From Gracilinanus agilis (taxonomy: Eukaryota), in the NCBI RefSeq assembly GCF_016433145.1, contig NC_058131.1:77073454-77137453 (forward strand): a DNA stretch of 64,000 bases, written 5' to 3'. Shown here piece by piece: positions 1-61,939 of the stretch (position 1 is the stretch's first letter; every line of letters begins with the position of its first letter). The notes below the pieces were generated by a model that worked only from the letters and a program-made list of their open reading frames with translations, did not search any database and was not told the origin of the DNA. Made by a program: the position numbers and the translations under genes.

Positions 1-376
1 CACGTATCGGTCCCATGCCATGGCTGCCAACACGTAGCTGCTCAAATTGCCTGCCATGTGGAAGAAGAAGACTTGGGTCAGGCAGGCTGTGTGACTGATG
101 GACTGGTGTCTAGTAAATAGAGAATAGAGCAATCTGGGGACTGTGGTAGAGGTAAAGCACAGGTCTCCCAAGGACAGGTTGACCAGGAAGATGTACATGG
201 GGGTATGGAGCTGTGGGTCTGAGCTGACCGCCATAAGAATCAACAGGTTTCCCAGAAAGGATGCCAGGTACACCACCAGGAAAAGTAGGAACAGAAAGTC
301 TTGATGGCTAGAGAAGGCCAAGTGGAAGAACTCAGAGACACCAGTCTGATTCCCCACAGTTATATTATTGGTGGAT
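1..376 (-). CDS. Class II olfactory receptor (family 1-like), N-terminal part (N-terminus to TM3); continues off the left edge; no in-frame ATG at the N-terminus
   Basis: Manual minus-strand translation: STNNITVGNQTGVSEFFHLAFSSHQDFLFLLFLVVYLASFLGNLLILMAVSSDPQLHTPMYIFLVNLSLGDLCFTSTTVPRLLYSLFTRHQSISHTACLTQVFFFHMAGNLSSYVLAAMAWDRYV. Contains the GN, LHTPMY and MAxDRY motifs. In-frame TAA at 384-382. Missed by the ORF track because it is edge-truncated. Confidence 0.9.
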
Positions 377-16201: not shown

Positions 16202-16204
<3 letters not shown>

Positions 16205-16240: not shown

Positions 16241-16244
<4 letters not shown>

Positions 16245-19039: not shown

Positions 19040-19365
19040 CTCCCCAAAGATTCATTAGGGAAGATGCATAATTGTCTGACCATCTATGTCCCCCTCTCAC
19101 TCGCTAGATCTTTCCCTCCTGGAGCAGAGGGGAGGGTCCCCAGGATAGAACTCTGCATTGAGAGATCTAATGAAGTGTCCATGCTCCAGATGCCTCAGAG
19201 CAATTAGTTTGGGGTTCTTTTTTGTTATCTCCACAATATTTTAACACTTGAAGTAGGAGATAGTAGAAAGCAGTGTTCTCATTGTTAGACCCCTTGGGCT
19301 CTGAATAAAATCTATCTCCTGAACAGGAACCCAGTTTCCATTCCTGTTCTTGTCCAGGGGAATTT
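19040..19365 (-). promoter_or_regulatory. Candidate OR promoter with homeodomain and O/E(EBF)-like sites, ~4.5 kb upstream of the OR1N-like CDS
   Basis: TAATGA (minus 19057-19052; plus 19168-19173), TAATTG 19069-19074, TCCCCAGGA 19137-19145 and TCCAGGGGAA 19353-19362. The region is better conserved between the copies than most flanks. Confidence 0.35.
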
Positions 19366-19413
19366 TTAGCTTATTGCTTCCCTCTGTCCATCCCAGACCC
19401 TGTTTCACCATAT

Positions 19414-19576
19414 CCTAGAGATGGGAGGTCCTAGGTTCAAATCTGACCTCAGACACTTCCCAGCTGTGTGACCCTGGGCAAGTCACTTGACCCCCATTGC
19501 CTACCCTTACCACTCTTCTGCCTTGAAGTCAATACACAGTATTGACTCCAAGACATAAGGTGAGGGTTAAAAAAAA
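19414..19576 (+). mobile_element. 5'-truncated young SINE1_Mdo-type SINE, present only in copy 1
   Basis: Starts mid-element at cctagagatgggaggtcc; poly-A end; absent at 39887-40005. Confidence 0.85.
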
Positions 19577-28012: not shown

Positions 28013-28950
28013 TTTCATTTAATTAAATAATTTAGATTATTTTTCCATGGTTATGTGATTTATGTTCTTCACCTCCCTTCCTTCACCTCCCTCTTGTAGC
28101 CAACTAGCAATTCCACTGGGTTTTAAATGTGTCATTGATCAAGACCTCTTTTGCATTAGGGTGATTGTTTAGAGTCTATATCCCCAATCATATCCCCATC
28201 AAACCATATATGATCAAGCACTTGTTTTTCTTCTGTGTTTCTACTCCCACAGTTTTTCCTCTGGATGTGGATAGCATTCTTTTTCGTAAGTCCCTCAGAA
28301 TTGTTTTGGATCATTGCATTGCTGCTAGTAGAGAAATCCATTACATTGGATTGTGCCACAGTGTGTCCTTCTCTGTGTAAGGTTCTCCTTGTTCTGCTTT
28401 CGCTCTGCATCAATTCCTTGATGTATCCTGGAGGTATATATCTAGTTCATTATTCCTTTTAGCACAATAGTATTCCATCACCATCAGATATCACAATTTG
28501 TTCAGCCATTCCCCAATTGAAGGCCACCTCTTCATTTCCCAATTTTTTTTTGTCATCACAAAGAGTGAGGCTATAAATATTTTTGTATAAGTCATTTTCC
28601 TTGTTTTCTCTTTGGGGTATAAATCCAATAGTGGTATGGCTGGATCAAAGGGTAGGCAATCTTTTAAAGCCCTTTGGGCATAGTTTGAAATTGGTTGGAT
28701 CAATTCACAACTCCACCAGTAATGCATTAATGCACCTATTTTGCCCATCCCCTCTAACATTTATGACTTTCCTTTGCTGTCATATTGGCCAATCTGCTAG
28801 GTGTGAGGTGGTAGCTTAGAGTTGTTTTGATTTTCATTTCTCTTATTATAAGAGATTTAGAGCACTTTTTCATTTGCTTATTGATAGTTTTGATTTCTTT
28901 ATCTGAAAATTGCCTATTTATGTCTGTTGACCATTTATCAATTGGGGATT
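28013..28950 (-). mobile_element. L1 3' fragment, duplicate of 7620-8585
   Basis: Same 5' junction (ttatcaattgggga|tttaca) and shared diagnostic bases. Confidence 0.9.
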
Positions 28951-34332: not shown

Positions 34333-35280
34333 TCAACATATCTGAGAGGCAAATATCTTGCCTCTGAAGAGACTCCTCAGGGCCACCTTCATGTCTTGAT
34401 TTCTCAGGCTATAAATGAAAGGGTTTAGCATTGGAGTTACTACTGTGTATACCATGGAGGTCACAATGTCTTTGGTGGGGAAAGTAGATGAAGGGCAGAG
34501 ATACACACTGAAGAGCGTACCATAAAACGTACAGACCACAGAGAGGTGAGAGCTACAAGTAGAGAAAGCTTTGCTCCTGCCACCCCCTGAGGATGGCATT
34601 CTGAGAATGGTGTAGACAATGCAGATATAAGAGACCAGAGTGCATAGGAAAGGAACTGTCATAATTGGACCACCTACAACAAAAACCATTAACTCATTAA
34701 TATGAGTGTCAGAGCAAGATACTTTCAACAGGGGACTGATGTCACAAAAAAAGTGGGATATTTCCCCAAGCACACAGAAGGACAATTTTGCCATGAGTAA
34801 AGTGTGCAAGAGAGCATGGAGATTAGTGATCACCCAGCACACGCTCACCAGAACGACACACACCCGTGGGCTCATGGCCGTGCCATAATGGAGTGGGTGA
34901 CAGATGGCCATGTAGCGATCATATGCCATCACCGCAAGCAGGAAACTGTCCATATCCCCAAAGGAAAGAAAGAAATAGAGTTGTGTCAGGCACCCTGTGT
35001 AGGAGATGGTGTGATGCTGTGTATAAAGGTTGAATAACATCTTCAAGACTGTGCTGGAAGATAGACCAATGTCAGCAAAGGAGAGACTGGCCAGGAAGAA
35101 ATACATGGGGGTGTGCAGGCGGGCTTCGGAGACAATGGCCAGGAAGATGAGTATATTCCCTGCCATGGTGACCAGGTACATGGACAGAAACAATCCAAAG
35201 AAGAGATGTTGGTGTTCTGGCCACTGGGAGAGCCCCCGGAGAAGAAACTCGGAGACGCTGGTCTGGTTTCCATGTCCCAT
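34333..35280 (-). CDS. Olfactory receptor, OR1N-like, intact 315 aa, identical to 13688-14635
   Basis: Identical translation in the ORF track; no nucleotide difference seen by eye. Confidence 0.93.
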   Translation of the reverse strand: MGHGNQTSVSEFLLRGLSQWPEHQHLFFGLFLSMYLVTMAGNILIFLAIVSEARLHTPMYFFLASLSFADIGLSSSTVLKMLFNLYTQHHTISYTGCLTQLYFFLSFGDMDSFLLAVMAYDRYMAICHPLHYGTAMSPRVCVVLVSVCWVITNLHALLHTLLMAKLSFCVLGEISHFFCDISPLLKVSCSDTHINELMVFVVGGPIMTVPFLCTLVSYICIVYTILRMPSSGGGRSKAFSTCSSHLSVVCTFYGTLFSVYLCPSSTFPTKDIVTSMVYTVVTPMLNPFIYSLRNQDMKVALRSLFRGKIFASQIC

Positions 35281-38200
35281 GTCACTGACATGTTAAAGCA
35301 TCACAAAATGAAAGACCTAAAGAAAATAAATGAGCATGCTTTAAATATCTCACAGAGTGGAGTGGAGATAACTAGACTCAGAATCAATACACCTGCATGC
35401 CTTTCATTCCATCCTCTAAGCTTATTTGGGTGACCTTTCCTCTCTTCTTTTCATCTTTAATCTCTACTCAAATACTATCTATTTTTTCTATACATATACT
35501 CATAATTCCTTTACCCTTAAAATGTTTTTGCTGCCACTTTTCTCAAGCCAAGAGTCTATCTTTCTATTCCCCTTCATTGCTAACCTCCTTTTAAAAAAGC
35601 AGCATAGACTCAGGATTTACATTCATTTCTCTCTCCCATCCCTTAATAAAATATCTAGATTCCTCTGCAAGAAATACTATACTAAAGTCTGGATATCAAC
35701 AGGATTTTCTTAATGGTCTGTTTTTGCATATATACATCTCTAATTCTCAGAGGACAAGAGGAGAGAGTATTGTAAGAATATAAATAACTTTACTATGATT
35801 TTACAAAAGAAGAGAACAAGGATGCCCCAAAGTATCATTGCAATGGAGTACAAGGATAGGAGGCTTGGTGCAGAACAAGGCTGAGTCTCTTGCTGGAGAG
35901 AACAACAAGTTTGGAGTCAGGAAAATCTGAAACACTCTCTCAGTGACTCTCAGCTAGTGACTTGACCTGTATCTGCCTTATTTTCCTCAATTGTAAAATG
36001 AGGATATTTATAGAAGCTACTTTCTAGAGTTATTGTGATGATTAAATGTGATCATACTTGCACTTAGCACAGTGTTTAGAATATAGTTATAGTTAATAAA
36101 TACTTGTTTCCTTTATTTCTGCCTTTTTCTCCCTTAGAGCCCTTTCTGAAGAGGAAAAGCCCTACTGGCCTTCAGATATGCTTTAATCAGTGATAAAATC
36201 TTAACAGGAGGGGCAGCCATGTGGTTCAGTGGATAGGATGTTAGGTCTGGAAATGAGAGGCTCTGCATTGAAATGTGAACTCAAGGCACTTCTTAATTTT
36301 GTGACTTTAGGCAAGTCACTTAACTTTAACTGTCTAGCCCTTACCACATTTCTGTCTTACAAGTGATACTCAGACAGATAGTAAGACAGTTGGTTAGGAT
36401 GATATTGTTTTTTTTTTAAACTTAGCATGTAGGGAATTGAGGAAAAAATTTAAAAATCAAACATAAAATGAGGATACAGTTTAGTTATGACTTTTCTGGA
36501 GTCTATTTTCTTGGAGAGTTCCATGGAACACCCTCAGTTTAAACAATTTTCTCAGTGTGACACAGCTAGTATGTGTCAAAGGCATGCCCCTTTTTAATAA
36601 TAGAAATAATAATAATTAAGAACAAGAAGAACCAACATTTATATAAGCCTTACAAAAGCTCAAGCACTGTGCTAAGTACTTTAAAACATGATTTCAGCTA
36701 TTTCTTAAAATAGCTCTTTAAGGTATATACTATTGTTATTGCTATCTTATTTGTTAATTAATAATTAAATTAATAATATGTGTATAATTTTGGAATCCAA
36801 CCTCCTCACAGGTTGTGTGTGTGTCTGTGTGTGTATGTGTGTGTGTAGTAGGTTTGTGTGTATACTTGAATATTTTAGAGTTTGTAAAGAGAAACAGAAT
36901 CAGAGAAGGCAGAGAGCCTGTCTTGGGGATATCCTATCCTAGAGTTATGAAACCCTTGTTTTCTTGTCCTGCCTCAGTCACATACTGTCAGTGTGACTTG
37001 AAACATCACCCTTTACCTGACAGTGCCCCAGGTCACATGCTAAGACTATCGACTGTGGAGTACTTGCACATCTGCAATGGTAGAGGATGTCTCTTACCCA
37101 GAGTTCCCTACATGTATAAAATCACAGGTCTTGACAAAAAAAAAGTTTTGTAAAGCACCTTGTAGTCATTATCTATCTGCCCTGATCTTCACAATAAACC
37201 AGTGTGGGTAGATACCTTGGGAATTATTTTGCTCCTTTTACAAATGAAAAGAATTGAGTGAAATAGATGATTTCCTCATGGTTGCAGAAGAAGTGAATAT
37301 CAGTAGAGGGGAATCATACCGAAGTCTCCACTGAAGCCAAGCCCCCAACTCTTTCCACCAGTCTCTGGTCTACCTCTAAGCCCTTGTTCAGTCTAGTTGC
37401 TCTGTTTGTAGTGCTCTCTTCCTTCTCTCTGGGTATCCTCAGCCATCCTTCAAAGTGCAGCTCCCATTCTATCTTCTCCCAGAAGCCTTTCTTAGAAGCC
37501 CCCACTTACCTTCATCTCTGAGTACTGAGCATCTGTTGTTTGTGACACAATATTGGTGCTTACTTTCTATGGCCTTGATGGTTGGCTGCTAAAGTAATAT
37601 GTTCTGGAGTTGGAGTCAAGGGGAACTGACTTTCCTGGAATCCTGTCTTAGACATTCTTCAGACTAGTTCCTTACCTCAAACCCCAGTTGTCTGAATCAA
37701 GGGGAAGTATACTGGTTGTTCTGCCCAAGGTGGGCCAATTAAGAGTTAATGGAAATCTAACAATGGGGAGATCTCTCTCATTTGGTGACTATACTCTTTC
37801 CAACAGCTTCACATATCATTCCTAAGTCTCTGTTTCTAGTCCTGACTACTTTCCTGTACTCCTGAAAACTGGGCATCTGAGCTCAAATTTAAACTCAGGA
37901 CCTCTTGCTTGTTTCCAGGCCCAGGACACTATCCACTGAGCCACCTAGCTGCCCTTCATGTTAAGGTTTTATCATTGATTAAAATGTATATGATGGCTAC
38001 TAGGGCTTCCCTTCTTCAGAAAGGACACTAGTGATAAAAAGAAGGAAGTAAAGGAAGCAAGTATTTATTAAGTATATATATTCTAATATATTCTATATTC
38101 TAATATATATTATGTAGTGATAATAATATGTTCTAATATATATATATATATTCTAAACACTCCTGACTTCCCTAGATTTTCTAGTCACCATGTACAAAAA

Positions 38201-40867
38201 CAAGTTCATAACCAGTTGCTCCAAACCCATATCTTTGGAGGTTTCTTTAACTCTTTCTACTCTGTGTCATCTCATATCTAATCTGGTCAGTAATCCTGCC
38301 CATATCACTTTTAACGTCTCTAACATTGGCCTCTCCTTCCCTGCTAAATGATACAGGTTATAGATTGCTTGACCTGGAGTAAGAAAAGACCTGACTTTAA
38401 ATCTGACCTGAGTGACCCTGGGCAAGTCACTGAACCTTTGTCTGTCTCAATTTCCTCATTTATGAAATGGAGATAATAATTGTAACTACTTACCAGCATA
38501 AAATGACATAATATTTTTTAAATTCTTTGAAAACTTTTAAGTACTATACAAATGCAAGGAATTGTTTTTATTATTACCATTACTATTATTATAAACTCAT
38601 TTACTGTCCATCCCTCTATAGGATCTGTAATTTATTCCTCTCACACCTTTGCTCCAGTTGTTTCTTATACCTGAAGCTCCTTTATCACATTTCACTGTTG
38701 AATTCCTTCCCAGTCTCTGATTTTCATAGAAATGGAAAATTGTCCCTATTTGTTCAATCAGTAATATGTTGGACTTCACATGCAGCTGACTTATATCCTT
38801 GTCATGTACTAATTTTTAGAGTATTTGTTTCACAGAGGTAACGTGATCTAGTGGATAAAGAGCCCAGCTTTCTGTCAGCCTTACATCTGTCTCACACTGA
38901 CTGTGTGTTTCTGGCAAGTCATTTGGTGTATCAATGCCCCATCCCAAGCAACCAGGACCCCAAGTGTCAAAGCAGTTACAAACTTACATTGGTCATGGGA
39001 GTCTCTTTGCTGAGAGATTCCTCTGCCAGTTAAATCACAGGTTGAAAACAAATGAAAAACCAAAAATGAAATCCAAAAGAAATGAGGCTGAGAGAAAGAT
39101 AGATATTTACCATCCATTACCTCCAGCTGTTCTGCTCATTTCAGATGCTGAGAAATTGTCACTGAGTGGACAATTTCTTCTGGCACCTGTCCTCTGCTCC
39201 TGATGATAGGAATTCTGGGGCTGGTCAGGGAATATCAGGGACCTTCTTTGCCTTGAAGAGAAGAGAAAATGTGTTTCACAGACTGTAGGTCTCTAGATTG
39301 GACAAGGGAAAGAAAGAAAATTCTTTGTCCTCAGTCTTGTCATTTAGAAGCATAAGTGTGGGGCCATGGAGCCCCACACAGAACTAGTGTGAATTAAGGA
39401 TTAGGTAGCTGAGTCCTAAGTACCTTTCCCCAACTCTACTTCCCCTCCCCCTGCTCCCAGAAGATTGAAGCTCTTGCTTTCTTAACTGGCACTTTGATAG
39501 CCTTGGAAAATACTCCCCAAAGATTCATTAGGGAAGATGCATAATTGTCTGACCATCTATGTCCTCCTCTCACCCCCCAGATCTTTCCCTCCTGGAGCAG
39601 AGGGGAGGGTCCCCAGGATAGAACTCTGCATTGAGGGATCTAACAAATTGTCCATGCTCCAAGTGCCTCAGAGCAATTAGTTTGGGGTTCTTTTTTGGTA
39701 TTTCCACAATCCTTTAATACTTGAAGTAGGAGATAGTAGAAAGCAGTGTTCTCATTGTTGGACCCATTGGGCTCTGAATGAAATCTATCTCCTGAACACG
39801 ATCCCTATCTCCATTCCTGTTCTTGTCCAGGGGAATTTTTAGCTTATTGCTTCCCTCTGTCCATCCCAGACCCTGTTTCACCATATCCTACCCTTGGACC
39901 TGAAACTAGAGGGTAATCAAACACTTAATCAGTCAATTAATAAGCATTTATTTAACACATTTTACGTCCCAAGACTATACTAGACACAGGGATAAGAAAG
40001 ATTAAAAATTAAATATCCCCTGCTGTCAACAAGTTTCCATTCTGTCAAGGGAGACAAGTTCCATACCAATAGGTACAAAAAAATAGTCAGACTAAATTCC
40101 AGGTCAGGGTGAAGCATGGACACTAGCACGTTCACAGAATATGAAAAACCATATTACAATCATCAAAATTTCATAGGCACAGAATTCTAATTTTTAATTA
40201 AAATGTTAATCTTTTTGTTACCTTTAGTTACTATATTACCTACTTTCACAATGTATTCTTCCCCCATCAACTATCCTCCCAGATACACAACACTTTGAAC
40301 AAGAATTTTAAAAATGGGAAAAAAGAATTTGCAAAAACTTTTTTCTCTGAAATTTGATGTTCTTTGCAGTCTATCACATCCATATTACATAGTATTAAGT
40401 TCTCTGAAGACAAGTTCCTCTGTCCCTACTTAACCTTGATTTGGGCATGATAGTGACTTAAAACTTTACTAGCCCCAGTGTACTAGAATGTTGTTAAGCT
40501 TTTGCAACCGGTATAGCTATTGTGAAGTTGAGGCTCTCTGCATGCCATGCTGAAACTTTTTAGTTCTTCAGTAAAGCATGATTCAATTTCTACACATACA
40601 CACAGTAGATATATATGTATGTATGTATGTATGTATATGTGGATATATTAATCCTATACATGCAACATATATACACAACACACATATATACATGGTTATA
40701 GTATTCATACTTATATGCATATGTGTCCTTAGGCACATACATATACATAAATACATATAGATTAAATGGAAATAGAGATGGTATATTGATTTACAAATAC
40801 ATCATTTCAATTAAACCTTAATGATATATACCATATATCTCCAAAGCTTCTCCTATCTCCTTCAAGT

Positions 40868-41090
40868 TGAAAAAAGTTAATATTGGGAATGGGAATAATA
40901 ATAAACTGGGAAATAACCACACCTCACAAGGGACAGGCAGACTGAGTGTCAGACTCTAATTGACTGAAGATCTCAAATCCACACAACTTTCTTCTTCTTC
41001 TTCTTCTTCTTCTTCTTCTTCTTCTTCTTCTTCTTCTTCTTCTTCTTCTTCTTCATTATTAATAATATCCACATTTCATTATCTATACCA
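40868..41090 (-). mobile_element. Truncated 3' LTR (R/U5 part) with a (GAA)n tract
   Basis: Minus strand ends ...cccattcccaatattaacttttttCA at 40868. The same U5-like end precedes CA-GT-TGG in the inverted cassette at 46605-46641. (CTT)n at ~40990-41054. Confidence 0.55.
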
Positions 41091-42216
41091 TGTGCTAATT
41101 TCATATGAGAACAATGATACCACAAATCTCTACCTAAAACTTTTACAGAAAATGGTGAAACTAATACAACTGCATAAGAACCTAACCAATTTTGTTCTGT
41201 TGCTGATGTTTTGTCAAAATTTTTCACATACATCATATCACCTGGTTGAAAATTATGAAGATAATAATCCAATTGACCAGATTGAATTAATACTCCCATA
41301 TCATGTAATTCTCTTAGCCTCTTCTGTAAAGTACTCAAATATGAAGCAATTTGGCAATCACCTCCTAAGAGTGATGCATAAACAGCCTTCCATATTTTCG
41401 CTTGTAGTGGAGCATGTCCATAGAGCATCTCATATGATGATATATGTAGATCTGTTCTTGGTCTCGTATGTAGGTAAAACAAAGCTATGGGAAGAATCTC
41501 TGCTCATTTGAGATGAGTTTAAGCACAGAGTTTCTCATCCATAGTCTTGAGTTCCCTATTCATATGCTCCACTTGACCTGAACTTTGTGGGTGATAAGGA
41601 ACATGATATTTAGGTGTTATTCCTAGATTCTCATAGATTCTTCTAAGGATATCCTGAGTGAAATAAGACCCCTTATCCTAATCTATGATTAATGGTACAC
41701 TGAATCTAGGCACAATTTCCTTGAATAATACTTTCACCACAAAGCTTGCTGTGTTGGTATTTGATGGAAACACTTCAGGCCATTTAGTTAGTCTATCAAC
41801 TATCACAAGACAATGTATTTTCCAGCTTTAGGCATGCAGATATAATCAATTTATAAACTCTCCAATGGACAATATTCTAAAGGCCTACCACCTAAACCTT
41901 TCTTTCTGAATGAACTTTGATTGAACTTTTGGCAGACTGAACAACTAATACAGATCTTATTTGCAACAGTACTTATTCCAGGAGCAACCCATTGTCTCTT
42001 GATGGAATACACAACAGCTTGTGTACCAAAATGACCTTTTGTGTAAATGGCTTGACACAAATAGGTATACAAGTCTTTTGGTAACAATGGTCTTCCTGTA
42101 TCAGTATTCCATGTCCCATTTTCTTTCCTAGCTCTAAATTTATCCTTCCACTTCTGGATATCTGAGTCTACATAAGCTTTTTCTAGATCATTAGAATTAA
42201 TAGATGTTAAATTCAT
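40973..42216 (-). pseudogene. ERV integrase (disrupted)
   Basis: ORFs 41851-42216 (HFG...CSVC zinc-finger region) and 40973-41482 (core end and GPY/F-like WLGSYAVVLV). Confidence 0.85.
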
Positions 42217-44004
42217 TATATAAATTGGAGCATTCTGGGCAGCATACTACGCAGTGATATCAGCCCTATGATTTCCTTTAGAGACTGAATCTCTACCATG
42301 AGTATGACTGACAATGAATTACTGTCAGCTGTTTTGGCTTCTGGATTGCTTCTAACAACTATTATTCCTGCATGAGCTATTGGTTTTCCTGATGCAGTAG
42401 TAAAACCTTGTTGTTTCCATAGCTTTCCTGTTGTATGGCAAACAGAAAATGCATACAGAGAGTCAGTGTAAATATTTACACTTTTACCTTCAGCTAGAAG
42501 ACAGGATTGCTTCAATGCCAATAATTCTGCACCCTGAACATTAAGATTACTAGGTAATGAGCCGTACTGCAGTGTCTTTAAATTCTGTGACAACTGCAGC
42601 TCCAGTACATCTTATTCCATTACATAAATATGATGGATCATCTGTGAATAATACCAAGTTTGGATTTTTGAGTGGAGTGTCTTTTAAATCCATCCTAGGC
42701 ATATCCACAAGATCTACTACCTCAATACATTCATGCAATGGCTCACTGTTCTTAGGCAAATCAGGAAGAAGAGTAGCTGGATTGAGTATGCTACATCTCT
42801 TCAGCTGGATGCTCTCACTACCTAAGAGAATAATTTCATACTTAGATATTCGTTGGTCTGAATATGATTGAGTACAAAACTTCCTCATTAGTGCTTCTAT
42901 CTGATGTGAACAATAAACTGTCAATGGACATCCCAGAACCAGATCAGCTGACTTCTGGACTAACACAGTCACTGCTGCTACCCTCCTTAGACAGGGTACT
43001 GTCCCCACAACTATTGGATCAAGTTGACAACTGTAGTATCCAATTTGACAATAACTCTGTCCTAAAGTTTGAGTCAACACACCAGAAGCTATACCTTTTG
43101 TTTTATTGACAGATAGCTGAAAAGGTTTCTCATAGTCTGGAATTCCTAATGCAGGTGCAGATAGAATGGCTTCTTTGAGTCTATTTAAGGCTACATGATG
43201 TTCAGGCTTTAGTTTCAGATGTTCCGGTTCTGTATTCCTGGTCAGATCTGTCAAGCATTTAGTGATCTCACTATACACAGGAATCCATTGTCTACAGAAA
43301 CCAGTAGTTCCAAGAATAGATCTAAGTTGTTTTTTAGTTCTAGGTGAATTCAGTTTCTGAATGTCAGCTATTCTCTTTTGTGTGATACTTCTGGAACCCT
43401 CTGACAACAAAGATCCAAGATATTGCACATGAGGCAAAACCTATTGTAATTTTTCCTTGGAGATTTTATGCCCTCGTTTGTATAACTTAATGAAAAGAAT
43501 CTTGTTGTCTCTAAGACACACCTTTGCATTTGGGGATGCTAACTCCACCAAGGACGGTCCCAAGCCCGGCTGAAAAAGGAGGAGGGTTGGGCGCGAGGCT
43601 AGCAACCTCACCCCGTAAAAATCTCACTTGCTACAGAAACTGCAACCTCATTAAACCAACAAGACCAACAATCATCTAGTCTGGAAGATTGCTCTCCAAC
43701 AGAGTCCACGAGGCGTGCTGGCAAAAGCCAACAAACTCCAGGTCTTTGTTAACAGATGCCTACGTCAAATCTTGAACATCAGATGACCTGAAAAGATCTC
43801 CAATACCAGAATCTGGGAAAGAACAATTCAGTATCCCATCAGTCAGGATGCTATGAAAAAAAAATATGGAACCCACCAGGGAGGAGGAAAGTCGGAAGGC
43901 CAAAACAGACCTGGCAAAGATATGCCCAGTTGGGGGAAGTTGCCCAGAACAGAGTCCTTTGGCGTGAGATGGTTGCAGCCCTATGCTCCTCTGGGAGTCA
44001 ATAG

Positions 44005-44051
<47 letters not shown>

Positions 44052-44454
44052 GAATATCATCCACAAAATGCACCAATTTACTCTCTTTAAATTTAATCGT
44101 TTTTAGATCTCTATGTAGAATTTGAAAGAACTGGCTAGGTGAGTCTGTATACCCCTCTGGAGGACGAGTCCATATCCCATGAGTTTTCTCCCAAGGGAAA
44201 GCAAAGATCTTTTGAGAGTCCTCATGAATTGGTATAGAGAAAAACGCAGAGCATAAATCTACCATGGTGAAATATCTAGCCTGACTTGGAATGGAAGAAA
44301 TTATAGCAGCTGGACATGGCACAACTGGATGAGTCTTGATGACATAATCATTTACCACTCTTAGATCTTGAATAAATTGGCAAACAGGTTGGCCATTTTC
44401 ATCAAGTTTTGGCTTCTTTATAGGCAAAATTGGTGTATTAAACTCAGAAAACAT
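42216..44454 (-). pseudogene. ERV reverse transcriptase and RNase H (disrupted, interrupted by the RTE insert)
   Basis: ORFs 43981-44454, 42550-43437 and 42216-42593. Confidence 0.9.
43543..44049 (+). mobile_element. Internally deleted RTE-clade retroposon with (TAA)n tail
   Basis: RTE-like 5' UTR (ggtcccaagcccgg...gctagcaacctcaccccgtaaaa) joined to RT C-terminal pieces (ANKLQVFVNRCLRQILNI; NPPGRRKVGRPKQTW; AQNRVLWREMVAALCS), then a TAA-repeat tail. Confidence 0.8.
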
Positions 44455-53866: not shown

Positions 53867-56759
53867 GTTCCCCTTTGTACAAAGCCAAAAGGTGGAGGGC
53901 CAGTATATGCTGCTCTGAAATCTTAGGCCCCAAAAGAGAATGTCATGGAGTGTCTGGTGTTTTCATGTTCTCTATAATGAGCTCTCTGTGGAGATGAGAG
54001 CATGGCAATCTGGAACTCTGGAGAGTGAAGAGAAAACATTACCCCTTGAGAATAAGAGAAGGAACTACAGAGCTCCTCAATCTCCATCTGTTTCCAAAGC
54101 TGATTCCCAGTGCTCTTCTGGGCCCTTAAATACTCCCACCCTGCCTTTTGGCAGAGCACTCTGGCATGTAGGTAGGGAAGGTGTCTCTGTTTTCTCTCAT
54201 CCCCTCTATTTCTACTTTAATTCTAACCTCTAATCATTGAAAAGCTTAAGGTTTGGGGACAATCTTTTGAAACAGATTTCCCTATATGGATTTGAGTCAA
54301 GGAAGGGATCTCTTTCTGAATGCTTATGGAACGTCAGCAAGTTCTTTCCTAAGGTGAGTGAAGTTTAGGTGGCTGAGACTGGAAGGGTAAGTGGGGGAAT
54401 CCGAATGTCTGGAAATTTTTTGCAAAGGTGAATTAGATTTGGGTGTATCCTACAAAGAGGGCAATGTAGGGGATAGGGTGAGAATGACAAGCCCTATTTA
54501 GAGATGAGAGAGGTTGGAATGACCCTCACTTTGCTTAAAATGAGTGTGGAGAGATGTGAGGTGAGGATCTGGGAGGCATAACTATAGGGCTGAAGTAGTG
54601 TATTAGGACCAGGAACATCCTATAGGAGGAACAAAAGACCCCGTGATCTCAATAAATGGCATTTTTCCTACCCCTCATTTCAGAAGCAGATACACACTAA
54701 ACTCTGTTGAGTTATTCAAGATATATCTTTAGGCAGGAGTGAGAAGATACTTCTCTGTTCAATGTGGACTTAATGGCTTAGTCTTCTCTCTCCCATTAAT
54801 TCAATTAAATTCAAAAACATTTATTAAGCCTCTACTCTTTATAATGTACTATAATAAATGCTAGAAAAGACACGAGGATAGAGAAGTCACATGTTTGCTT
54901 TTATGGAAACAACATTCTTGTAGAGGTACACACATATTTAGAAACTAAAATAAATCAGTTGTCTTTGATTTTATCATTGGGGATACCAAAAGCTGTTGTA
55001 ACTCTACCATTTAGTAAATCGTCCAAGAGTTTCAGAACTGAAAAATTCACCACCTGACTGTCCTTGTCCTGAGCCTCTCACAATTTAGCTAGGCTGGACC
55101 TCTTATAATTGTAAAGATTACTATGTAAGGCCCAAGGCTCCAGTTCATAGTAATTCTGACCTTGAAATAATAGTTATGAAACACATTATCCTAGTGATAA
55201 TGCCCCAAGTCAAAAAGAAATATTTCTTTAACCATGAGGTCGGTATCCTAGTCCTGCACTAGGAAAGGGCAACTTTCTCCTTTGTTGTGCCCAGTACTGT
55301 CCCTTACTCTCATGACCCTAAAGAAAGATCATATAAGGACAGATTTGACCACAGGTATTTATGAGAGATAATATTAGATCAATAAGATGTAGTTTTTAAT
55401 AAAATAAAAATATAATTAGGAATGGATACCAACAGAGCCCCTTCATAATAAGACAGGGGAGAAGAGTGAGAAACACCAGTTCTTTAGTTCCTCTGTGTCT
55501 TTTTTTCCACTTAGCTTTCTTGTTGCTAGAGGAAGCACCTGTGATTTAAAAACAAACAAACAAACAAACAAACAACAACAACAAAAACCCTAGTCTTCTA
55601 TCTAGCTACTTATACGTTTTAGTGTCATCTTTCCTGGTCTCCCATTAAATCTGCCAAAATGCTACCTTTCTGATGATGCATTAGGGAAAAGCATCATTGG
55701 CTCCCTTCACTCCTTGTACAGAATTCCTGGAAGTCTCACCCATCCGCCAATCTGGTCATGGTCTTGGGTTGAATTTCCTCTCTTTCCACAATGAGAAGAG
55801 ATGTGAGTCCTAAAGTTTTTAGAGACTTAGTCCTCCCTGTTGTATGCCAGTCTTCACCAGAATGGCTCTTACACTCGGAAAAGAGAAATATACCTAGAAC
55901 CCATACTTGAAGCCCTTTGAGCTTGACAACCTATTAGCATTTTAATTCTGCTAGCATAACCTTTGCACAACAATGAGGCATATCAGTAAGTTTTAAAATC
56001 AAGACTCATATGCACAAAAACTGTAATCTGTGAAGATTAAGAGGTCTAAATTAGATGAATTCATTATAGGTCAAGGGATGAAGGAAGGTTTCTTTCTGCA
56101 ACTGGCTTTTGATTGGGAATTTAAATGATGAGCAGGAAATTTAAAAGAATTAGAATAATATTTTATGGATAAGGAATTGTGTGAGCAGAGGCATGAGTGG
56201 AAAAGTTCAGTGTATGTGTATGCTTCTGTGAATCCATGGAAGGAAATGATTTAAGTGTGGAAAGATGAGATGGAATCAGAGGGTACAAAGGCTTAACTGT
56301 TGAACAAAAGGACCTCAAATCTATAGTAGGGAACCATGAAAGGATTTGGAGCATGGGAAAAAAATGACAATCTCAATACAGAGAAAATTATTTGGACAAC
56401 ATGAAAGATGAATTGGAGCTCTTGAAGAACTTAGGTTGACTGGGGGGTTGAATCTCCTTTGGAAGTAGCCACCTACAGCAGTGGGGAAAGAAAGAAAAAA
56501 GTCTGTAGGTAGTCATTTAACGATGTATTCCTTAAATAAAATGTATTTAAAAAGGAAAAAAATTCATTAGATAGACATTCATTAAAAGGCAACTTCAATT
56601 ATAGACTAAACTCATATCTTACACAACTCAGATTATGAATGAACATGTTATCTATCTTCTTACTCATGTAGGAAATGAGTGGGTTTTTAATTAATTCTGT
56701 TAATAAATAGAAATACTAACAATATGAATCACAATGAACTTGTTAATTGGTCAATAAAG

Positions 56760-57660
56760 AATAAATATTTATTCAGTATCTTCTATGTTCTAGGCACTGT
56801 GCTATGTGCTGGGAATATAGGAAGAGACAAAAGACAGTCCCTGCCTGAAAGGTGCTTATACTCTAATGGAGGAGACATCATGAAAACAAATATACTCAAA
56901 TCAAGTTATTTGGAAGACAAGTAGGACATAACAGAAGGAAAGCACTAAAATTAAGAAGGGTTGGGAAAGGCTTCCAGTAAAAGATGGAATTTTAGTTGAG
57001 ACTTAAAGGAAGTCAGGTAGGTCACAAAAAAAAAACAAAACAAAACAGAGGATGGAGAGAATTCCAGGCATATGGGATAACCAGAGAAAATGCCTAGATA
57101 TGAGATGTAGTGCTTTATTTGTGGGATAGCCAGAAGGCCAGTGCCACTTGATCAAAGAGTATCTGTTGGAAAGTGAGGTATAAGAAAACAGGAAAGTTAA
57201 GAGGGGGCTAAGTTACAAAAAAACTTTAAATGCCAAATATTGGATTTTCTATTTAATCCTAGAGGCAATATGGAACCATTGGAGTTTATTGAATGGAGGG
57301 TGGGGTGGTGTTAATGTTCTTTGACCTGCACTTTAGGAAAATCGTTTTAATGCCTGAATAAGGGGTGAATTGGAATTGGGAGAGACATGAGGCAGGCAGA
57401 CCCTAGTGGTCTATTATAATAGTTCAGTCATGAAGTGAAAATGACTTGGACCAGAGCAGTGGTAGTGTCTGAGAAGAGAAGGAGGTATATACAAGAAATG
57501 TTGTTAAGATGAAATCGAAACATTTTGGCAATAGATTGGTTTGGGGAGTATGAGAGGGTAAGATAGTGGGGAATCCAGGATGCCTCTTAGGTTGCAAGTC
57601 TAAGAAAATGGGAGGAAAAATGTTTTTATCTAGAGAAACAGGGATGGTAGGAGAAAGGGA
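56760..57660 (-). mobile_element. L2 LINE 3' end
   Basis: tatttattcagtatcttctatgttctaggcactgtgcta...agacagtccctgcc...gaagggttgggaaaggcttcc. Confidence 0.7.
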
Positions 57661-58114
57661 GGGTTAAGGAGAAAAGATGAGTTCATAATTTAGCATCTAA
57701 TTTTACTTTAAGTTTGATCTTATTAATGATTATCATGATATGTTAATATTTATGATGCTGTTTATTAAAATTTTACTATATTCTGAGTTTTAGAGTAAGA
57801 GCAGAAGAGGAATATAGTAGTTGCTTATATTCTAATAAGGGGAGACAGAATACACAGGGGAATGGTGGCTATGAAAGGGTGTTTTGATCTGGAAAGTCAC
57901 AGGAAATGGTTGAAGTAATTGTGTATACTATTTTCCTGATTCTGCTTGCTTTGCATCAGTTGGTGTCTTTCTTTAATTCTCTGTATTCATTATATTTATA
58001 ATTTCTTATAGTATAGTAACATTCCATTGCATTCATAGAACATGAGTTGTTTGTCCCTTCCCCAATCAGTTGACATTTTCTTGTTTCCACTTTTTTCTAT
58101 TGCAAAATGAATTG

Positions 58115-58123
<9 letters not shown>

Positions 58124-58174
<51 letters not shown>
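58124..58174. repeat. (TG)n microsatellite within an old minus-strand L1 fragment (~57960-58200)
   Basis: Direct reading. Confidence 0.9.
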
Positions 58175-58177
<3 letters not shown>

Positions 58178-59171
58178 ACTTTCCATTTAAACTTTGATCT
58201 CCTTGTTTAATATTTTGGACATAACACATATTTATATATACATATATGTAAATACACATACAAATTCATTCAACTATTTATATGCATATATTTATATGTA
58301 ATAAACATAGTACTTAATGTTTATTTTCTATTTGAGATTCTAACCAGCCCTACAAAGAGAGTAGTGAAAGTCTTAATGTGATTTTACAACCTCAGATATT
58401 AAATGACTCCCCCAGGGTCACTTAGCTAGCAAGTGGCTGTCTTAAAATTCAGACTTTAGTCTTCTGATAACAAAAAGTGTTTTTCTCATAAATCACAGTG
58501 AAGTTTTATTTTTTATCACAACGTGTCTCAGGGGAATTGAGAGAAGATGATTTTTTTTCCTTACTTCAGATAGGGAATCTTGGTACCCCAGAGAATTTGA
58601 AGATACTCATTCAAATGAAAACTAGAACCACAGAGAGAATAAAGAAATAAAGAAAATCTTCAGGAAAGGAGGCTGAGGTATAGCTGACAGTGTTTGCACT
58701 TCCTACCCAGATATTTTTTTATAGGATAACTATTTTAGAGGTGGATAGTGGATGGTCAAAATCAGCAAATATATTCCAGAAACAACAGGAAGCTTATAAT
58801 TTGAGCACACTTTTGGAAATAAAATGGTGAATGGGTAACCATTCCAGGGAGAAGCAGGAGTAAAGGGCATTGTGTGAGGCTATCCAGGAGAAATAAATAA
58901 GTAAAACCTTTCCACCCATTATTATTTAACAAAATGTATTTTATATATGACTTGATTATATATCAGTGCCCTTTGGGGATTGCATATTTATTCTAATGAT
59001 GCTGCCATATATAGCTGAGAAGTCTTTCAAATTGCCTCTTCAAATTGGATAAATGAAAGCTGGGGAGCATCTTTCTGAAAAGTCTTAAAGAAGTTAAATA
59101 TACAGCCTTTTGGTTAGATTAGCTGTGGAACTTTCTCAGTCCATCTCTGCATCTCCCCAATCTAGGTACAG

Positions 59172-60111
59172 AATCATCAACAACATAACAGTAAGAAATC
59201 AGACCAGCTCCTCTGAGTTCCTCCTCCTGGCCTTCTCTACTCACCAAGAACTATTGTTCCCATTGTTCCTGACCCTATATCTGACAACCCTTCTGGGGAA
59301 CCTCCTAATCCTCATTGCTGTTGGCTCAGACCCACACCTCCATACGCCCATGTTTGTACTCCTGGTCAACCTGTCCCTGGCAGATCTGTGCTTCACCTCC
59401 ACTACAGTGCCCAGGCTCCTCCATGCCTTGCTCACAGGGGATCAGACCATTACCCATTCAGCCTGCCTCTCCCAAGTCTTCTTTTTCCTGATGGCAGGCA
59501 ACGTGGACAGCTATGTATTAGCTGCCATGGCATGGGACCGCTATGTAGCCATATGCAGACCATTGCACTATGCTAATGTGGTGACCCTGCCTCGATGTAT
59601 GGTGCTTCTGGGAGCTATGTGGGTGGGCACAGCCCTCCATTCTTTGCTCCACACAGTCCTCATTGCTCGCCTCACCTTCTGCAGTCATCGTGCTCTCCCA
59701 TATTTCTACTGTGATGTCCATCCTTTACTACATCTTGCCTGCTCTGACACCTCTCTCAACTACCTGGTAGCTGTATTTGAGGGTGGCCTTGTCATCATCA
59801 TGCCTGCTGTTTGCATTATGGTCTCTTATGGCTTTATTGTAGCTGCTGTGTGTAAGATTCGAGCCCCTGGAGGTTTCCAGAAGGCATTTTCCACGTGTGG
59901 ATCCCATCTAACTGTAGTTTTGCTTTTCTATGGAACTGTACTGGGTGTCTACCTGCAGCCCCCAAGCCAAGGTGAGGGCCAAAAGGAAGGCCGAAATCTT
60001 GTAACAACAGTTATGTTTTCTGTGGTGGCTCCAACCCTAAACCCCTACATCTATAGTCTGCAGAACAGAGAAATCAAAGCAGCCCTGGTAAAAGTGTTTA
60101 TGGGGAATTAG
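59172..60111 (+). CDS. Class II olfactory receptor (family 1-like), intact 7TM frame without an N-terminal ATG; probable second coding exon
   Basis: IINNITVRNQTSSSEF...LHTPMF...MAWDRYVAICRPLHY...KAFSTCGSHL...PTLNPYIYSLQN. In-frame TAA at 59095-59097; the ORF track starts at a TTG (59110). Confidence 0.88.
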
Positions 60112-61939
60112 GGTTAGGATCTTAGTAAGCAAATGGACAGTGTAGGATCCCTACTGGGGCTAGCTTTCCCTTTCTTTCTCCTCATCTATTCCTTTACTCA
60201 GGGATCAGATAACAATAGACTTACACACATATTTACACATACTCAGGTCAGGCATTTTTATGCAGTGAAAGCAATTTTATGTCAGGCTCAGGGACATTAA
60301 GGGAGAAACAGTATCTAGGAATATAATTGCAGGTTCTCAGCATAGTAACAGAATTCAGCTACTGCTGGCATCACTAAAAGATCTGTTAGTTTATGTTTAA
60401 CCTTGAATTTTATCCCCATCTTGGCTTCAGTTCTCCTCTCTAAGAAGGTTATCTCATCTTCATATTTGTTTTGACCTAAGACTGAGGTGACCTTGCAGAG
60501 GCATGAACTGTATCATCTTTCTTGAAGCAGAAAGGACGATGGCAGATTTCCACCTGATACGAACCATTTTAATCATTAAAACAGTTCCCTGTGACCCAGT
60601 AAACATTTTCATCCTGAACTGCAACTTGATTAAGGTTTGATGTTTAGATTTTGTTGATACTTCATAAGACTTGGTGCCTTCACAATTATCTATCCTACTT
60701 CATTTTTCAATAATAAGCCAATAGTATGCCTAGATAAAGATTCAGGCTGGGGATCTTCATGCAACATAAACTACTTTATGATAACTTCAGAGAACTGACT
60801 CCTAAAGGTTCTCAAAAAGAGAAAAATTGAACACATGATCTCTTTCATTAATCCCATGTTCTCTCTTCCTACTTCTGCTATCCTATGTGGAATAGTTTCA
60901 TAGCGATTAAATGGCTAAGCCAATCTGTAATCTAAAATGTTTCACTGGGTGTTAAGAATTCTGGAAGAAGAGAGGTTGAAAAGACATCATATGCTAAATT
61001 GTCCAATTTTGATCCTTGATGACATCAATCATTGCCTCTAAAACATACTCAACCCACACTTGAAGACCTCCACAAAAGGGGGACTCATTACTGAAAATGC
61101 TTTTCTCTTTTAGATAATTTTGGATAATTCTAAAAATATTTGGTAAATTAATGAGAGAACAATGAATGAATGAATATGTAATTTCATATCTAGGACTAAC
61201 AGGAACTCCACAGCATTATTATCAAGATAACCATAATCCTTCAGCAAAGGAAGAATAAGACAAAGAAGCTTGGATTCTATGGGACTAGGCAATGATAGAT
61301 TTGTACAAAACTAAACAGAGACAGGAAGTCTCACTCAAGGTGAAAGTAAAAAAATTTTAGAGTTGGAAGGGAATTTAGAGATCTCATAGTATGTTACCCT
61401 TTCATTTTACTTATGAGGGTACTTAGGTCCAAGTTGGCTATGAGACTGATCTAAGATCACACAGCTAGTTAATATCATACTTGGGGCTTAAAATCAGATT
61501 TACTAGTAACTAAGTCTCTGTTCAGTATATATATATATATATTATTATTATTATTATTATTAATGGATAATAAATATCCATATCTTTCCAGAAGCAAGAT
61601 AAAAAACATGAAATCAGTCAATTTTTCTTCCTCAAGAAAGGAAATGGTATATAAACAGGAAATTGGAGGGGAAATTTAGGGACTGAGGATGATTAAGGTG
61701 AAAAGAGCCAAGCAGTTCTTAAAATCTCATAAGCTAATGGACCAGGTTTACAGAGAGGTCTTTTTCTTTCTTCTCTTTGTGAGGAAAGGAGGATCTTCCT
61801 TTTCTCTTTCTTGATAAGGGTGAGTTAAAAAATAGTGACTCTTGAATGGTGCAGACATTCTTAGACTGAATGACTCACTCTCCCTTCTCAAGTAATCAAG
61901 GACATGAAAATGGTTTCAATGGACTAAAACTTTTTCTCC

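What the first reader, a model, noticed from the sequence alone, without database searches (positions are those of the whole stretch)
59095..59200. Intact OR with no start codon: canonical Met is ATA and a phase-2 splice acceptor sits 4 codons upstream
Seen: the 7TM frame is open to 60111, but there is no ATG between the in-frame TAA (59095-59097) and HTPM after TM1. The residue four before the NQT sequon, where Met sits in MGHGNQT, is ATA (Ile). A pyrimidine tract (ctttctcagtccatctctgcatctccccaa) is followed by tctAG (59164-65) and tacAG|A (59170-71), both phase 2. The OR at 1-376 has AG|A and ATA at exactly the same codon positions (cat AGA tcc acc aat aat ATA act gtg ggg aat cag vs tac AGA atc atc aac aac ATA aca gta aga aat cag), although the proteins are only ~73% identical (85/117 by hand). 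Known: most mammalian OR CDSs are single-exon, but curated human and mouse ORs with the CDS split over two exons exist. Inference: this is a marsupial OR lineage that lost its own ATG before duplicating and stayed under selection by taking its start from an upstream exon, gaining a second N-glycosylation sequon (N-I-T). ATG-based annotation would mislabel such genes as pseudogenes.
Basis: partly seen in the sequence, partly recalled or inferred. Interest (0 to 1): 0.78.

Follow-up and report, generated by a model that had tools for sequence, protein, structure and literature searches.

The report
Two-exon marsupial olfactory receptor gene
This intact smell-receptor gene has no start codon in its main exon because the start very probably sits on a small conserved exon 4.8 kb upstream, a known but rarely annotated gene layout that standard pipelines misread as a pseudogene or truncated protein.

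Summary
The olfactory receptor (OR) frame 59098-60111 (+) is open and matches Pfam 7tm_4. It has no ATG before TM1, and ATA sits four codons before N-Q-T. A pyrimidine tract precedes two phase-2 AGs (59164-65, 59170-71).

I found the missing exon. Window 54286-54353 reads ATG plus 21 codons plus 2 nt, followed by AAG|GTGAGT. Spliced to 59172, it gives a 335-aa OR across a 4,818-nt intron.

A homologous exon of 65-71 nt, open and in phase 2 with a GTGAGT donor, lies 1.8-10.7 kb upstream of 11 of 12 subfamily genes. These come from the window's species and seven other marsupials, in three paralogue clades. Each of the 11 splices in silico to a complete 335-339 aa ORF.

Two relatives regained an ATG in the main exon (Sarcophilus MGNQT, Petaurus MENQT). 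In both, the upstream exon has decayed, with stops and a lost donor; Sarcophilus also has a frameshift and a lost acceptor.

The coding exon has dN/dS of 0.14-0.36, and the window's own branch is constrained (p=0.003).

There are three gaps:
- No RNA data were available.
- The upstream peptide is only weakly constrained (pN/pS about 0.8).
- The upstream exon of the paralogue at 1-376 was not found.

This is a new marsupial case of the split-CDS ORs described in human and mouse (Barnes 2020). It was absent from all 30 public models inspected.

The parts
53975..53980 (+). TAATGA, a homeodomain-type site in the conserved block upstream of exon 1 (putative promoter element)
   Evidence: Invariant TAATGA in 8 aligned loci. 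Its role is inferred from the known architecture of OR promoters and was not tested.
54042..54051 (+). CCCCTTGAGA, an O/E(EBF)-like site (putative promoter element)
   Evidence: CCCTTGAGA is nearly invariant in 8 aligned loci. Inferred.
54126..54132 (+). TTAAATA, a TATA-like motif. If used, the transcription start would lie near 54160.
   Evidence: Conserved CCTTAAATA in the alignment. Inferred; no transcription-start data.
54286..54353 (+). Coding part of exon 1: ATG plus 21 codons plus 2 nt (MDLSQGRDLFLNAYGTSASSFL, then AG). It ends at the donor AAG|GTGAGT.
   Evidence: The ATG, open frame, length of 2 mod 3 and donor are conserved in orthologues (Gracilinanus, Antechinus) and paralogues.
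54354..59171 (+). Intron of 4,818 nt, phase 2 (4,812 nt if the AG at 59164-65 is used)
   Evidence: Spliced ORF computed. The size lies within the range reported for split ORs (550-22,628 bp; PMC7055050).
59095..59097 (+). In-frame TAA. It closes the frame upstream, so no same-exon upstream ATG can serve.
59131..59163 (+). Polypyrimidine tract of the 3' splice site
   Evidence: conserved across loci
59164..59165 (+). Alternative acceptor AG, also phase 2. It would add two residues (R-Y-R instead of R).
   Evidence: Present in most relatives but absent in Antechinus and in the 1-376 gene. Gives a 337-aa ORF. The NCBI model for Dromiciops uses this AG.
59170..59171 (+). Acceptor AG (tacAG|A). 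This is the AG conserved in every split copy.
   Evidence: Mutated to AC only in Sarcophilus P0002, which has its own ATG.
59172..60111 (+). Exon 2 coding part: the last base of an Arg codon, then IINNITVRNQT, then the 7TM core, then the stop at 60109-60111
   Evidence: 7tm_4 E 2.4e-54. 89% identical to Gracilinanus P0001. dN/dS 0.14-0.36.
1..376 (-). N-terminal 125 codons of a clade-C paralogue with the same AG|A and N-I-T arrangement. The rest runs off the window.
   Evidence: No homologue of exon 1 was found for it in the window.

Best explanation
The locus is a functional class-II, OR1-like olfactory receptor gene whose coding sequence is split over two exons.

Transcription probably starts in a conserved promoter-like block near 54000-54200. 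Exon 1 carries the start codon at 54286 and 22 2/3 codons. It is spliced from the donor at 54353|54354 (AAG|GTGAGT), across a 4.8-kb phase-2 intron, to the acceptor at 59171|59172. Alternatively it joins the tandem AG six bases upstream.

The mRNA encodes a 335-aa receptor (337 aa with the alternative AG). Its extracellular N-terminus is about 27 residues longer than in ordinary ORs and carries two N-glycosylation sequons (N-I-T and N-Q-T).

The arrangement is ancestral to a marsupial OR subfamily of three paralogue clades. In some lineages a start codon has since arisen two codons before N-Q-T, where many copies, including two of three clade-B copies, read GTG, one G-to-A step from ATG. After that change the upstream exon is free to decay.

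What is shown: the sequence anatomy, the conservation of the exon, its phase and its splice sites, and purifying selection on the receptor. What is inferred: the splicing itself, the transcription start, the promoter elements and translation from 54286.
For: Anatomy:
- The spliced CDS is 1,008 nt, in frame, and encodes 335 aa.
- The donor matches the full consensus AAG|GTGAGT.
- The acceptor has a 30-nt pyrimidine tract.

Orthology:
- The upstream regions of Gracilinanus (L001) and Antechinus (L002) are collinear with window 53900-61000.
- The block 53905-54543 is the longest and best-scoring conserved block upstream of the coding exon against Antechinus (73% over 664 nt, E 8e-98).

Conservation of exon 1:
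- The ATG, open frame and GTGAGT donor are kept in 11 copies: clade A (MDWSQGR...), clade B (MNQSW...) and clade C (MD.SW...).
- Copy lengths are 68 nt in ten, 71 in one and 65 in one, so intact copies carry only in-frame indels.
- Between-clade identity is 58% in the exon and 31% in the intron just after the donor.
- A rough random-substitution model gives about 0.002 for seven clade-A copies all staying intact.

Splicing in silico:
- Every one of the 11 genes splices to a complete 335-339 aa ORF through the homologous AG|A.

Natural control:
- Sarcophilus P0002 has its own ATG. Its exon 1 has TGA at codon 3 and a 5-nt deletion, its donor is GT to TT, and its acceptor is AG to AC.
- Petaurus P0004 has its own ATG. 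Its exon 1 has TAG at the same codon and its donor is GT to CT.

Selection on exon 2:
- dN/dS is 0.36 against Gracilinanus and 0.14-0.27 against the others.
- On the window's own branch there are 20 synonymous and 23 non-synonymous changes, p=0.003 against the neutral expectation.
- The N-x-T sequon between the acceptor and N-Q-T is kept in 11 of 12 genes.

Precedent:
- 13 human and 41 mouse ORs have this structure, with more than 90% of the introns in the N-terminal domain or TM1 (PMC7055050).
Against: - There is no transcript evidence. The only runs that hold the locus are contigs of a relative about 93-94% identical. They are collinear with genomic DNA across the acceptor, so they are DNA or unspliced.
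- The exon-1 peptide is weakly constrained. pN/pS is 0.7-0.8 and substitutions show no codon-position bias (98:76:84). Part of its conservation could therefore be at the nucleotide level, as a 5' UTR or regulatory element.
- The ATG has T at position -3, a weak Kozak context, although +4 is G.
- Two AGs lie 6 nt apart, so the exact junction is undetermined.
- An unseen intermediate exon cannot be excluded.
- Koala P0006 and Macrotis P0020 have both their own ATG and an intact exon 1, so the complementarity is not absolute.
- The window's second no-ATG gene (1-376) has no detectable exon 1 in 64 kb.
Confidence: 0.8

Rival explanations
1. The gene is a pseudogene, or is becoming one. It lost its start codon and its open frame is a leftover. 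The upstream block would be only a conserved promoter and 5' UTR exon.
For: There is no ATG in the main exon. No RNA evidence exists. The exon-1 peptide evolves almost neutrally, with pN/pS about 0.8. The neighbouring no-ATG gene at 1-376 lacks a detectable exon 1.
Against: The no-ATG state is shared with Gracilinanus, Antechinus, Macrotis, Dromiciops and Sarcophilus genes. All of these have intact ORFs of about 312 codons and dN/dS of 0.14-0.36, and the window's own branch is constrained. A frame without a start would not stay open across the divergence of American and Australian marsupials. Exon 1 keeps its ATG, frame and donor in 11 copies, and it decays where a new ATG made it redundant.
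Confidence: 0.06
2. The receptor is functional but translation does not start at 54286. It might start at a near-cognate codon in exon 2 (for example the in-frame TTG at 59110 or a CTG), or at an ATG on another, unidentified upstream exon. Exon 1 would then be a 5' UTR exon with a conserved uORF-like frame.
For: Exon 1 shows weak amino-acid constraint and a weak -3 Kozak base. NCBI models in relatives use other upstream exons (P0001, P0010, P0018).
Against: The NCBI first exons are not conserved. The Gracilinanus one lies in a 2.4-kb lineage-specific insertion, and each species uses a different one. The region upstream of the acceptor is splice-site-like and carries stops in the window (TAA at 59095, with a second in-frame TAA six bases upstream). 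Phase compatibility between exon 1 and exon 2 is kept in 11 genes, through in-frame indels only, which a mere UTR exon would not require.
Confidence: 0.1
3. The missing ATG is an assembly or sequencing error, or a private mutation of the sequenced individual.
For: No positive evidence.
Against: The same ATA and AG|A are present in independent assemblies of Gracilinanus and Antechinus. Contigs from runs of a close relative keep the AG (changes only at 59169 and 59173).
Confidence: 0.01

Closest known systems
Split-CDS olfactory receptor genes of human and mouse (Barnes et al. 2020, BMC Genomics 21:196, PMC7055050). Class 1 comprises loci formerly called pseudogenes because they lack an initiation ATG, e.g. 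Olfr1174-ps/1175-ps/1177-ps and OR5D3P. Cases with long first-exon contributions include Olfr239/Olfr55 (28 aa) and OR2V1 (24 aa).
   Same: The start codon is on an upstream exon and the intron interrupts the extracellular N-terminal domain. The intron is a few kb long (theirs range from 550 to 22,628 bp). The Met and the junction are conserved in orthologues and paralogues. The receptor exon is under purifying selection, and the genes were previously mislabelled.
   Different: This is a marsupial OR1-like subfamily that is not in their list. The split is shared by three paralogue clades and by American and Australian marsupials, so it is one old event followed by expansion, with at least two later reversions through ATG gain. 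Their cases rest on RNA-seq junctions; this one rests on comparative sequence only.
Ordinary mammalian OR genes: single coding exon plus one or more 5' UTR exons
   Same: Same overall layout: a small first exon behind a promoter with homeodomain and O/E-like sites, a multi-kb intron, and a large exon holding the 7TM core. The neighbouring ORs at 13688-14635 and 34333-35280 are of this type (MGHGNQT...).
   Different: Here the first exon is coding and the intron is phase 2 inside the CDS. The main exon has no start.
[quoted passage not shown] 2014, seen only as a reference in PMC10869828)
   Same: These are OR genes with introns in the CDS.
   Different: I did not read the paper. They are different OR groups and are unlikely to be homologous events. 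This is a lead only.

Membership tests
Vertebrate olfactory receptor (Pfam 7tm_4, class II, OR1-like) | Match to the OR-specific 7TM profile above the curated cut-off | tested here: met
   PF13853 scores 185.5 bits against a cut-off of 27, E 2.4e-54, covering profile positions 2-278 of 280.
Vertebrate olfactory receptor (Pfam 7tm_4, class II, OR1-like) | OR signature motifs: MAYDRY-type after TM3, KAFSTCxSH before TM6, PxLNPxIYSLRN in TM7, and an N-terminal NxT sequon | tested here: met
   MAWDRYVAICRPL, KAFSTCGSHL, PTLNPYIYSLQN and NQT are all present in the translation. The motif definitions come from established knowledge.
Vertebrate olfactory receptor (Pfam 7tm_4, class II, OR1-like) | Expression in olfactory sensory neurons and response to odorants | not testable with these tools
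   No RNA run holds the locus.
Split-CDS OR gene (sensu Barnes et al. 2020) | Intact full-length ORF only when an upstream exon is joined; initiation Met on that exon | tested here: met
   54286-54353 joined to 59172-60111 gives 1,008 nt and 335 aa with no stop. There is no ATG in exon 2 before TM1.
Split-CDS OR gene (sensu Barnes et al. 2020) | Initiation Met and splice junction conserved in orthologues, or in the closest paralogues | tested here: met
   The ATG, GTGAGT donor, phase and AG|A acceptor are conserved in Gracilinanus and Antechinus orthologues and in 8 further paralogues.
Split-CDS OR gene (sensu Barnes et al. 2020) | Transcript (RNA-seq) support for the exon-exon junction | tested here: inconclusive
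   The look-up of sequencing runs returned no run on record as RNA. The four runs laid are genomic-like contigs of a relative and show no junction at this intron.
Split-CDS OR gene (sensu Barnes et al. 2020) | Intron located in the N-terminal domain or TM1 (true of more than 90% of known cases) | tested here: met
   The intron falls after residue 22, nine residues before the N-Q-T sequon.
OR pseudogene | Disrupted frame or relaxed constraint (dN/dS near 1) | tested here: not met
   No stop or frameshift in 312 codons. dN/dS is 0.14-0.36, and the window's own branch gives p=0.003 against neutrality.

The most novel reading that the evidence does not exclude
A whole marsupial OR subfamily has carried a coding first exon since before American and Australian marsupials diverged. 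It spans three paralogue clades, with dozens of genes across species. That would make it one of the oldest and largest families of split-CDS ORs. On this reading the 23-residue N-terminal extension and its extra glycosylation sequon are a functional add-on, for example for receptor trafficking or surface expression, and not merely a vehicle for a start codon. Lineages then switch back and forth between split and single-exon forms by a one-step GTG-to-ATG change, with some genes (koala, bilby) making both isoforms.
Probability: 0.25. Interest if true: 0.6.

Novelty: new member of a known kind. Interest (0 to 1): 0.5.

Why it matters
Counts of functional OR genes, and of OR pseudogenes, in marsupials rest on single-exon, ATG-to-stop searches. 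This subfamily shows those counts are biased.

None of the 30 public models I inspected uses the conserved first exon. Of the models for genes without their own ATG, 8 start at internal Mets and 5 carry invented N-termini; the rest are open-ended fragments.

The case extends the human and mouse discovery of split ORs to marsupials. It gives a dated example, older than the didelphid-australidelphian divergence. It also offers a natural experiment: regaining an ATG is followed by decay of the upstream exon and its splice sites. That is evidence from evolution alone that the split form is the one in use.

In practice, it supplies exact junctions to look for in marsupial olfactory transcriptomes, and a rule for re-annotating these genes.

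Tried and rejected
1. RNA evidence. The four best runs are contigs of a relative about 93-94% identical and look genomic, since they cover intron and repeats and are collinear across the acceptor. They give nothing for or against splicing.

2. A same-exon upstream ATG, as in the NCBI models P0007 and P0013. I rejected this for the window gene because of the TAA at 59095 and a second in-frame TAA six bases upstream. The 'MSLN.Q' resemblance among models lies in the splice-site region and is not conserved.

3. The NCBI first exons of P0001, P0010 and P0018. These are not conserved: the Gracilinanus one sits in a 2.4-kb insertion absent from the window.

4. Exon 1 of the 1-376 paralogue. I tried blastn, tblastn with the exon-1 peptides, and nhmmer profiles of clade A, B and C exons over the whole window on both strands. 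I also ran a mechanical scan for ATG-open-phase-2-GTRAG exons.
   - The candidates at 11762-11700 and 2965-2847 are not homologous, and the first has no donor.
   - The block conserved with Sarcophilus and Macrotis at 8001-8582 looks like an interspersed repeat (my reading: a LINE-1 fragment), not an exon.

5. Look-up of P0023, a protein 95% identical to the paralogue and possibly its orthologue in a close relative. It is not on record.

6. Searching protein databases for the spliced product. This was not possible, because the tools take only unspliced references and I did not type the sequence.

7. Literature. I found no paper on split ORs in marsupials in the held library.

8. Whether eutherian or monotreme relatives (OR1F12-like) share the exon. 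This was not tested because the look-ups were exhausted.
Full report
**Observation**

The window carries an OR-like frame on the + strand, open from the in-frame TAA at 59095-59097 to the stop at 60109-60111.
- It matches Pfam 7tm_4 at E 2.4e-54 over 277 of 280 profile positions.
- It has the OR motifs MAWDRY, KAFSTCGSHL and PTLNPYIYSLQN.
- No ATG occurs in any frame between 59098 and 59350. The first Met is in HTPM, after TM1.
- ATA (59185-87) sits four codons before N-Q-T and creates a second sequon, N-I-T.
- A 30-nt pyrimidine tract is followed by AG at 59164-65 and AG at 59170-71. Each leaves one base to finish a codon, so both are phase 2.
- The partial OR at 1-376 (-) shows the same AG|A and ATA at the same codon positions. 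It is 73% identical over 123 aa.

**Relatives**

The closest proteins are marsupial ORs named 1361-like, 1f45-like or 1F12P-like. They include Gracilinanus (89%), a partial Monodelphis entry (95%), Sarcophilus and Sminthopsis (86%), and koala, Petaurus, wallaby, Antechinus, bilby and Dromiciops (75-83%).

Their annotated N-termini fall into several groups.
- 14 of the 30 models begin M-G/E-N-Q-T, a Met two codons before the sequon. Eleven of these are from diprotodonts (koala, Petaurus, wallaby); the rest are from Sarcophilus, Sminthopsis and the bilby (Macrotis).
- Models for genes without their own ATG have mutually unrelated N-terminal extensions (P0001, P0007, P0010, P0013, P0018).
- Others start at internal Mets and so lose TM1 (P0011, P0026, P0030, P0041, P0049, P0085, P0089, P0095).
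- Three more are open-ended fragments (P0021, P0023, P0024).

This is what annotation software produces when a gene has no visible start.

**Finding the first exon**

I fetched the genomic loci of these proteins. The Gracilinanus contig (L001) and the Antechinus locus (L002) are collinear with window 53900-61000, so they are positional orthologues.

The first exon that NCBI predicted for Gracilinanus lies in a 2.4-kb insertion absent from the window. The longest and best-scoring conserved block upstream against Antechinus is window 53905-54543 (73% over 664 nt, E 8e-98).

Inside that block, all three species have an ATG, an open frame and an invariant CTAAG|GTGAGT.
- In the window this is 54286-54353: ATG plus 21 codons plus 2 nt.
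- In Antechinus it is also 68 nt.
- In Gracilinanus it is 71 nt, through an in-frame 3-nt insertion.

The exon therefore ends in phase 2, which is what the acceptor AG|A requires. Joined to 59172-60111, the CDS is 1,008 nt and encodes 335 aa, beginning MDLSQGRDLFLNAYGTSASSFL-R-IINNITVRNQT. The intron is 4,818 nt. Barnes et al. report a mean of 3.4-3.8 kb and a range of 550-22,628 bp for split ORs.

**Breadth of conservation**

Profile searches with nhmmer found homologous exons upstream of the other subfamily genes. They fall into three sequence types that match the three paralogue clades of the receptor tree.

| Clade | Exon-1 peptide | Genes |
|---|---|---|
| A | MDWSQGRS.PLK.YGKS.S.LL | window, Gracilinanus, Antechinus, two bilby genes, koala |
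| B | MNQSW...L.LEVNGR..SLLQ | Sarcophilus, Dromiciops, bilby |
| C | MD.SW..SI.LK.YGR.ET..Q | Sarcophilus, bilby |

- For 11 of 12 genes, a script that joins the exon to the homologous AG returns a complete ORF of 335-339 aa. Donors are always GTGAGT, acceptors are YAG|A, and introns are 1.8-10.7 kb.
- Intact copies differ in length only by multiples of three (65, 68 or 71 nt).
- Between clades the exon is 58% identical, while the intron just downstream of the donor is at background (31%).
- A crude model that scatters the observed number of substitutions at random gives about 0.002 for all seven intact clade-A copies keeping ATG, frame and GT. That model ignores shared ancestry and is only indicative.

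**A natural control**

Sarcophilus P0002 has its own start (ACT ATG GGA AAT CAG). Its exon-1 homologue shows several lesions:
- TGA at codon 3;
- a 5-nt deletion;
- the donor changed from GT to TT;
- the acceptor AG changed to AC.

Petaurus P0004 (MENQT) has TAG at the same codon, a different mutation, and its donor is changed from GT to CT.

Two further exon-1 copies whose downstream genes lie outside the fetched loci are also multiply disabled. Koala L007b has ATG to GTG plus a stop. Bilby L004b has ATG to AAG, a 2-nt deletion and a stop.

So copies are either fully intact or carry several lesions, and the decayed copies whose gene is known sit in front of genes that no longer need them.

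The pattern is not absolute. Koala P0006 and bilby P0020 have both their own ATG and an intact exon 1 with an in-frame junction. They may be recent gains or may make two isoforms, as Barnes et al. describe for their second class.

The new ATG sits where many copies read GTA or GTG. In clade B, two of three copies read GTG and the bilby copy reads ATG, so there one transition suffices. The gain has occurred at least twice, once in clade A of Australian marsupials and once in clade B of the bilby.

**Selection**

Nei-Gojobori dN/dS of exon 2 is 0.36 against Gracilinanus and 0.14-0.27 against ten other genes, all with intact frames.

I assigned window-Gracilinanus differences by parsimony, using six Australian sequences as outgroup. 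This places 20 synonymous and 23 non-synonymous changes on the window's own branch. Against a neutral expectation of about 74% non-synonymous, p = 0.003. This gene has therefore been under purifying selection since that split.

The N-x-T sequon between the acceptor and N-Q-T is kept in 11 of 12 genes. This region would be untranslated if initiation were further downstream.

Exon 1 itself is only weakly constrained as protein:
- pN/pS is 0.81 within clades and 0.73 between them;
- substitutions show no third-position excess.

What is conserved is chiefly the ATG, the open frame, the length and the donor.

**Promoter (inference)**

In eight aligned loci, the 300 nt upstream of the ATG contain three conserved motifs:
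- an invariant TAATGA (window 53975-80);
- a near-invariant CCCTTGAGA (54042-51), which resembles an O/E (EBF) site;
- a TTAAATA (54126-32).

Homeodomain plus O/E sites close to the transcription start are the established signature of OR promoters. This fits exon 1 being the first exon, with a start near 54160. It was not tested.

**What could not be shown**

There are no transcript data. The run search returned no RNA run. The four runs laid are contigs 90-95% identical to the window, with depth over intronic repeats, and pieces collinear with the genome across the acceptor (X2 at 59134-59303, X4 at 59107-59763). They show only that a close relative keeps the AG.

Which of the two AGs is used is open. 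The one at 59170-71 is the only AG present in every split copy. The one at 59164-65 is used in the NCBI Dromiciops model. Either keeps the frame.

An additional small exon between the two cannot be excluded, though the conserved phase match argues against it.

The 1-376 paralogue belongs to clade C. No exon-1 homologue was found for it anywhere in the window on either strand. A block shared with its Australian relatives at 8001-8582 looks like an interspersed repeat, which I read as a LINE-1 fragment. A segmental duplication (7641-19417 against 28019-39890) lies upstream of it. Its status is therefore unresolved.

**Comparison with what is known**

Barnes et al. 2020 (PMC7055050) curated 13 human and 41 mouse ORs with the CDS split over two exons.
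- Most have the intron in the N-terminal domain.
- Many were previously labelled pseudogenes for lack of a start.
- They are conserved across mammals and expressed like intact ORs.

This locus meets their criteria, including conservation of the Met and the junction, except for RNA support. Their list holds no obvious member of this subfamily, and their paper does not mention marsupials. I found no paper on split ORs in marsupials in the held library.

The finding is thus a new member, and apparently a large and old family, of a known kind of gene structure.

**Verdict**

I put the probability at about 0.8 that the gene is a functional two-exon OR starting at 54286. The remainder is split between an unknown start (0.1), a pseudogene (0.06) and other explanations.

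Interest is moderate. It is not surprising in kind, but it is a clean, datable case with a built-in evolutionary control, and it has direct consequences for counts of marsupial OR genes.

Noticed in passing
window 7641-19417 and 28019-39890: Segmental duplication of about 11.8 kb, offset about 20.5 kb, 88-98% identical. Each copy carries an identical 315-aa single-exon OR (13688-14635 and 34333-35280, minus strand, MGHGNQT...). That OR is only 47% identical to the split gene. The duplication is either recent or an assembly artefact.
   Followed up: partly
window 40960-44454: Retrovirus-like pol reading frames on the minus strand (295-aa and 157-aa pieces that look like reverse transcriptase, by eye), next to a long poly-Ser/poly-Lys low-complexity run at about 40990-41100. 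It appears to be a decayed endogenous retroelement. I observed it only.
   Followed up: no
window 8001-8582 (minus strand): Fragment that aligns with repeats upstream of the clade-C ORs in Sarcophilus and Macrotis; I read it as a LINE-1 piece. It mimics a conserved upstream block but is a repeat.
   Followed up: yes
window 56750-57550: Very high contig depth (up to about 1,800) in the laid runs, with many short joints. This marks a high-copy interspersed repeat inside the intron.
   Followed up: no
L001 (Gracilinanus JADWME010000050.1) 9-533 vs 12160-12668, and 1494-2889 vs 13629-15024: The two ends of this 15.2-kb contig repeat each other with a period of about 12.1 kb. This is either a tandem duplication or an assembly artefact around the OR.
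   Followed up: no
L003 1666-2330: Sarcophilus carries a fragmented, frame-shifted clade-A OR pseudogene 8 kb upstream of P0002.
   Followed up: no
L007 177-244 and L009 8096-8163: Koala P0006 and bilby P0020 have both a start codon in the main exon and an intact, in-frame upstream exon. They are candidates for making two N-terminal isoforms.
   Followed up: partly
L006 18685-18749; L007 19929-19996; L004 about 19965-20030: Further exon-1 copies whose downstream genes lie beyond the fetched loci. The Dromiciops copy is intact (65 nt). The koala and bilby copies have lost the ATG and carry stops.
   Followed up: partly
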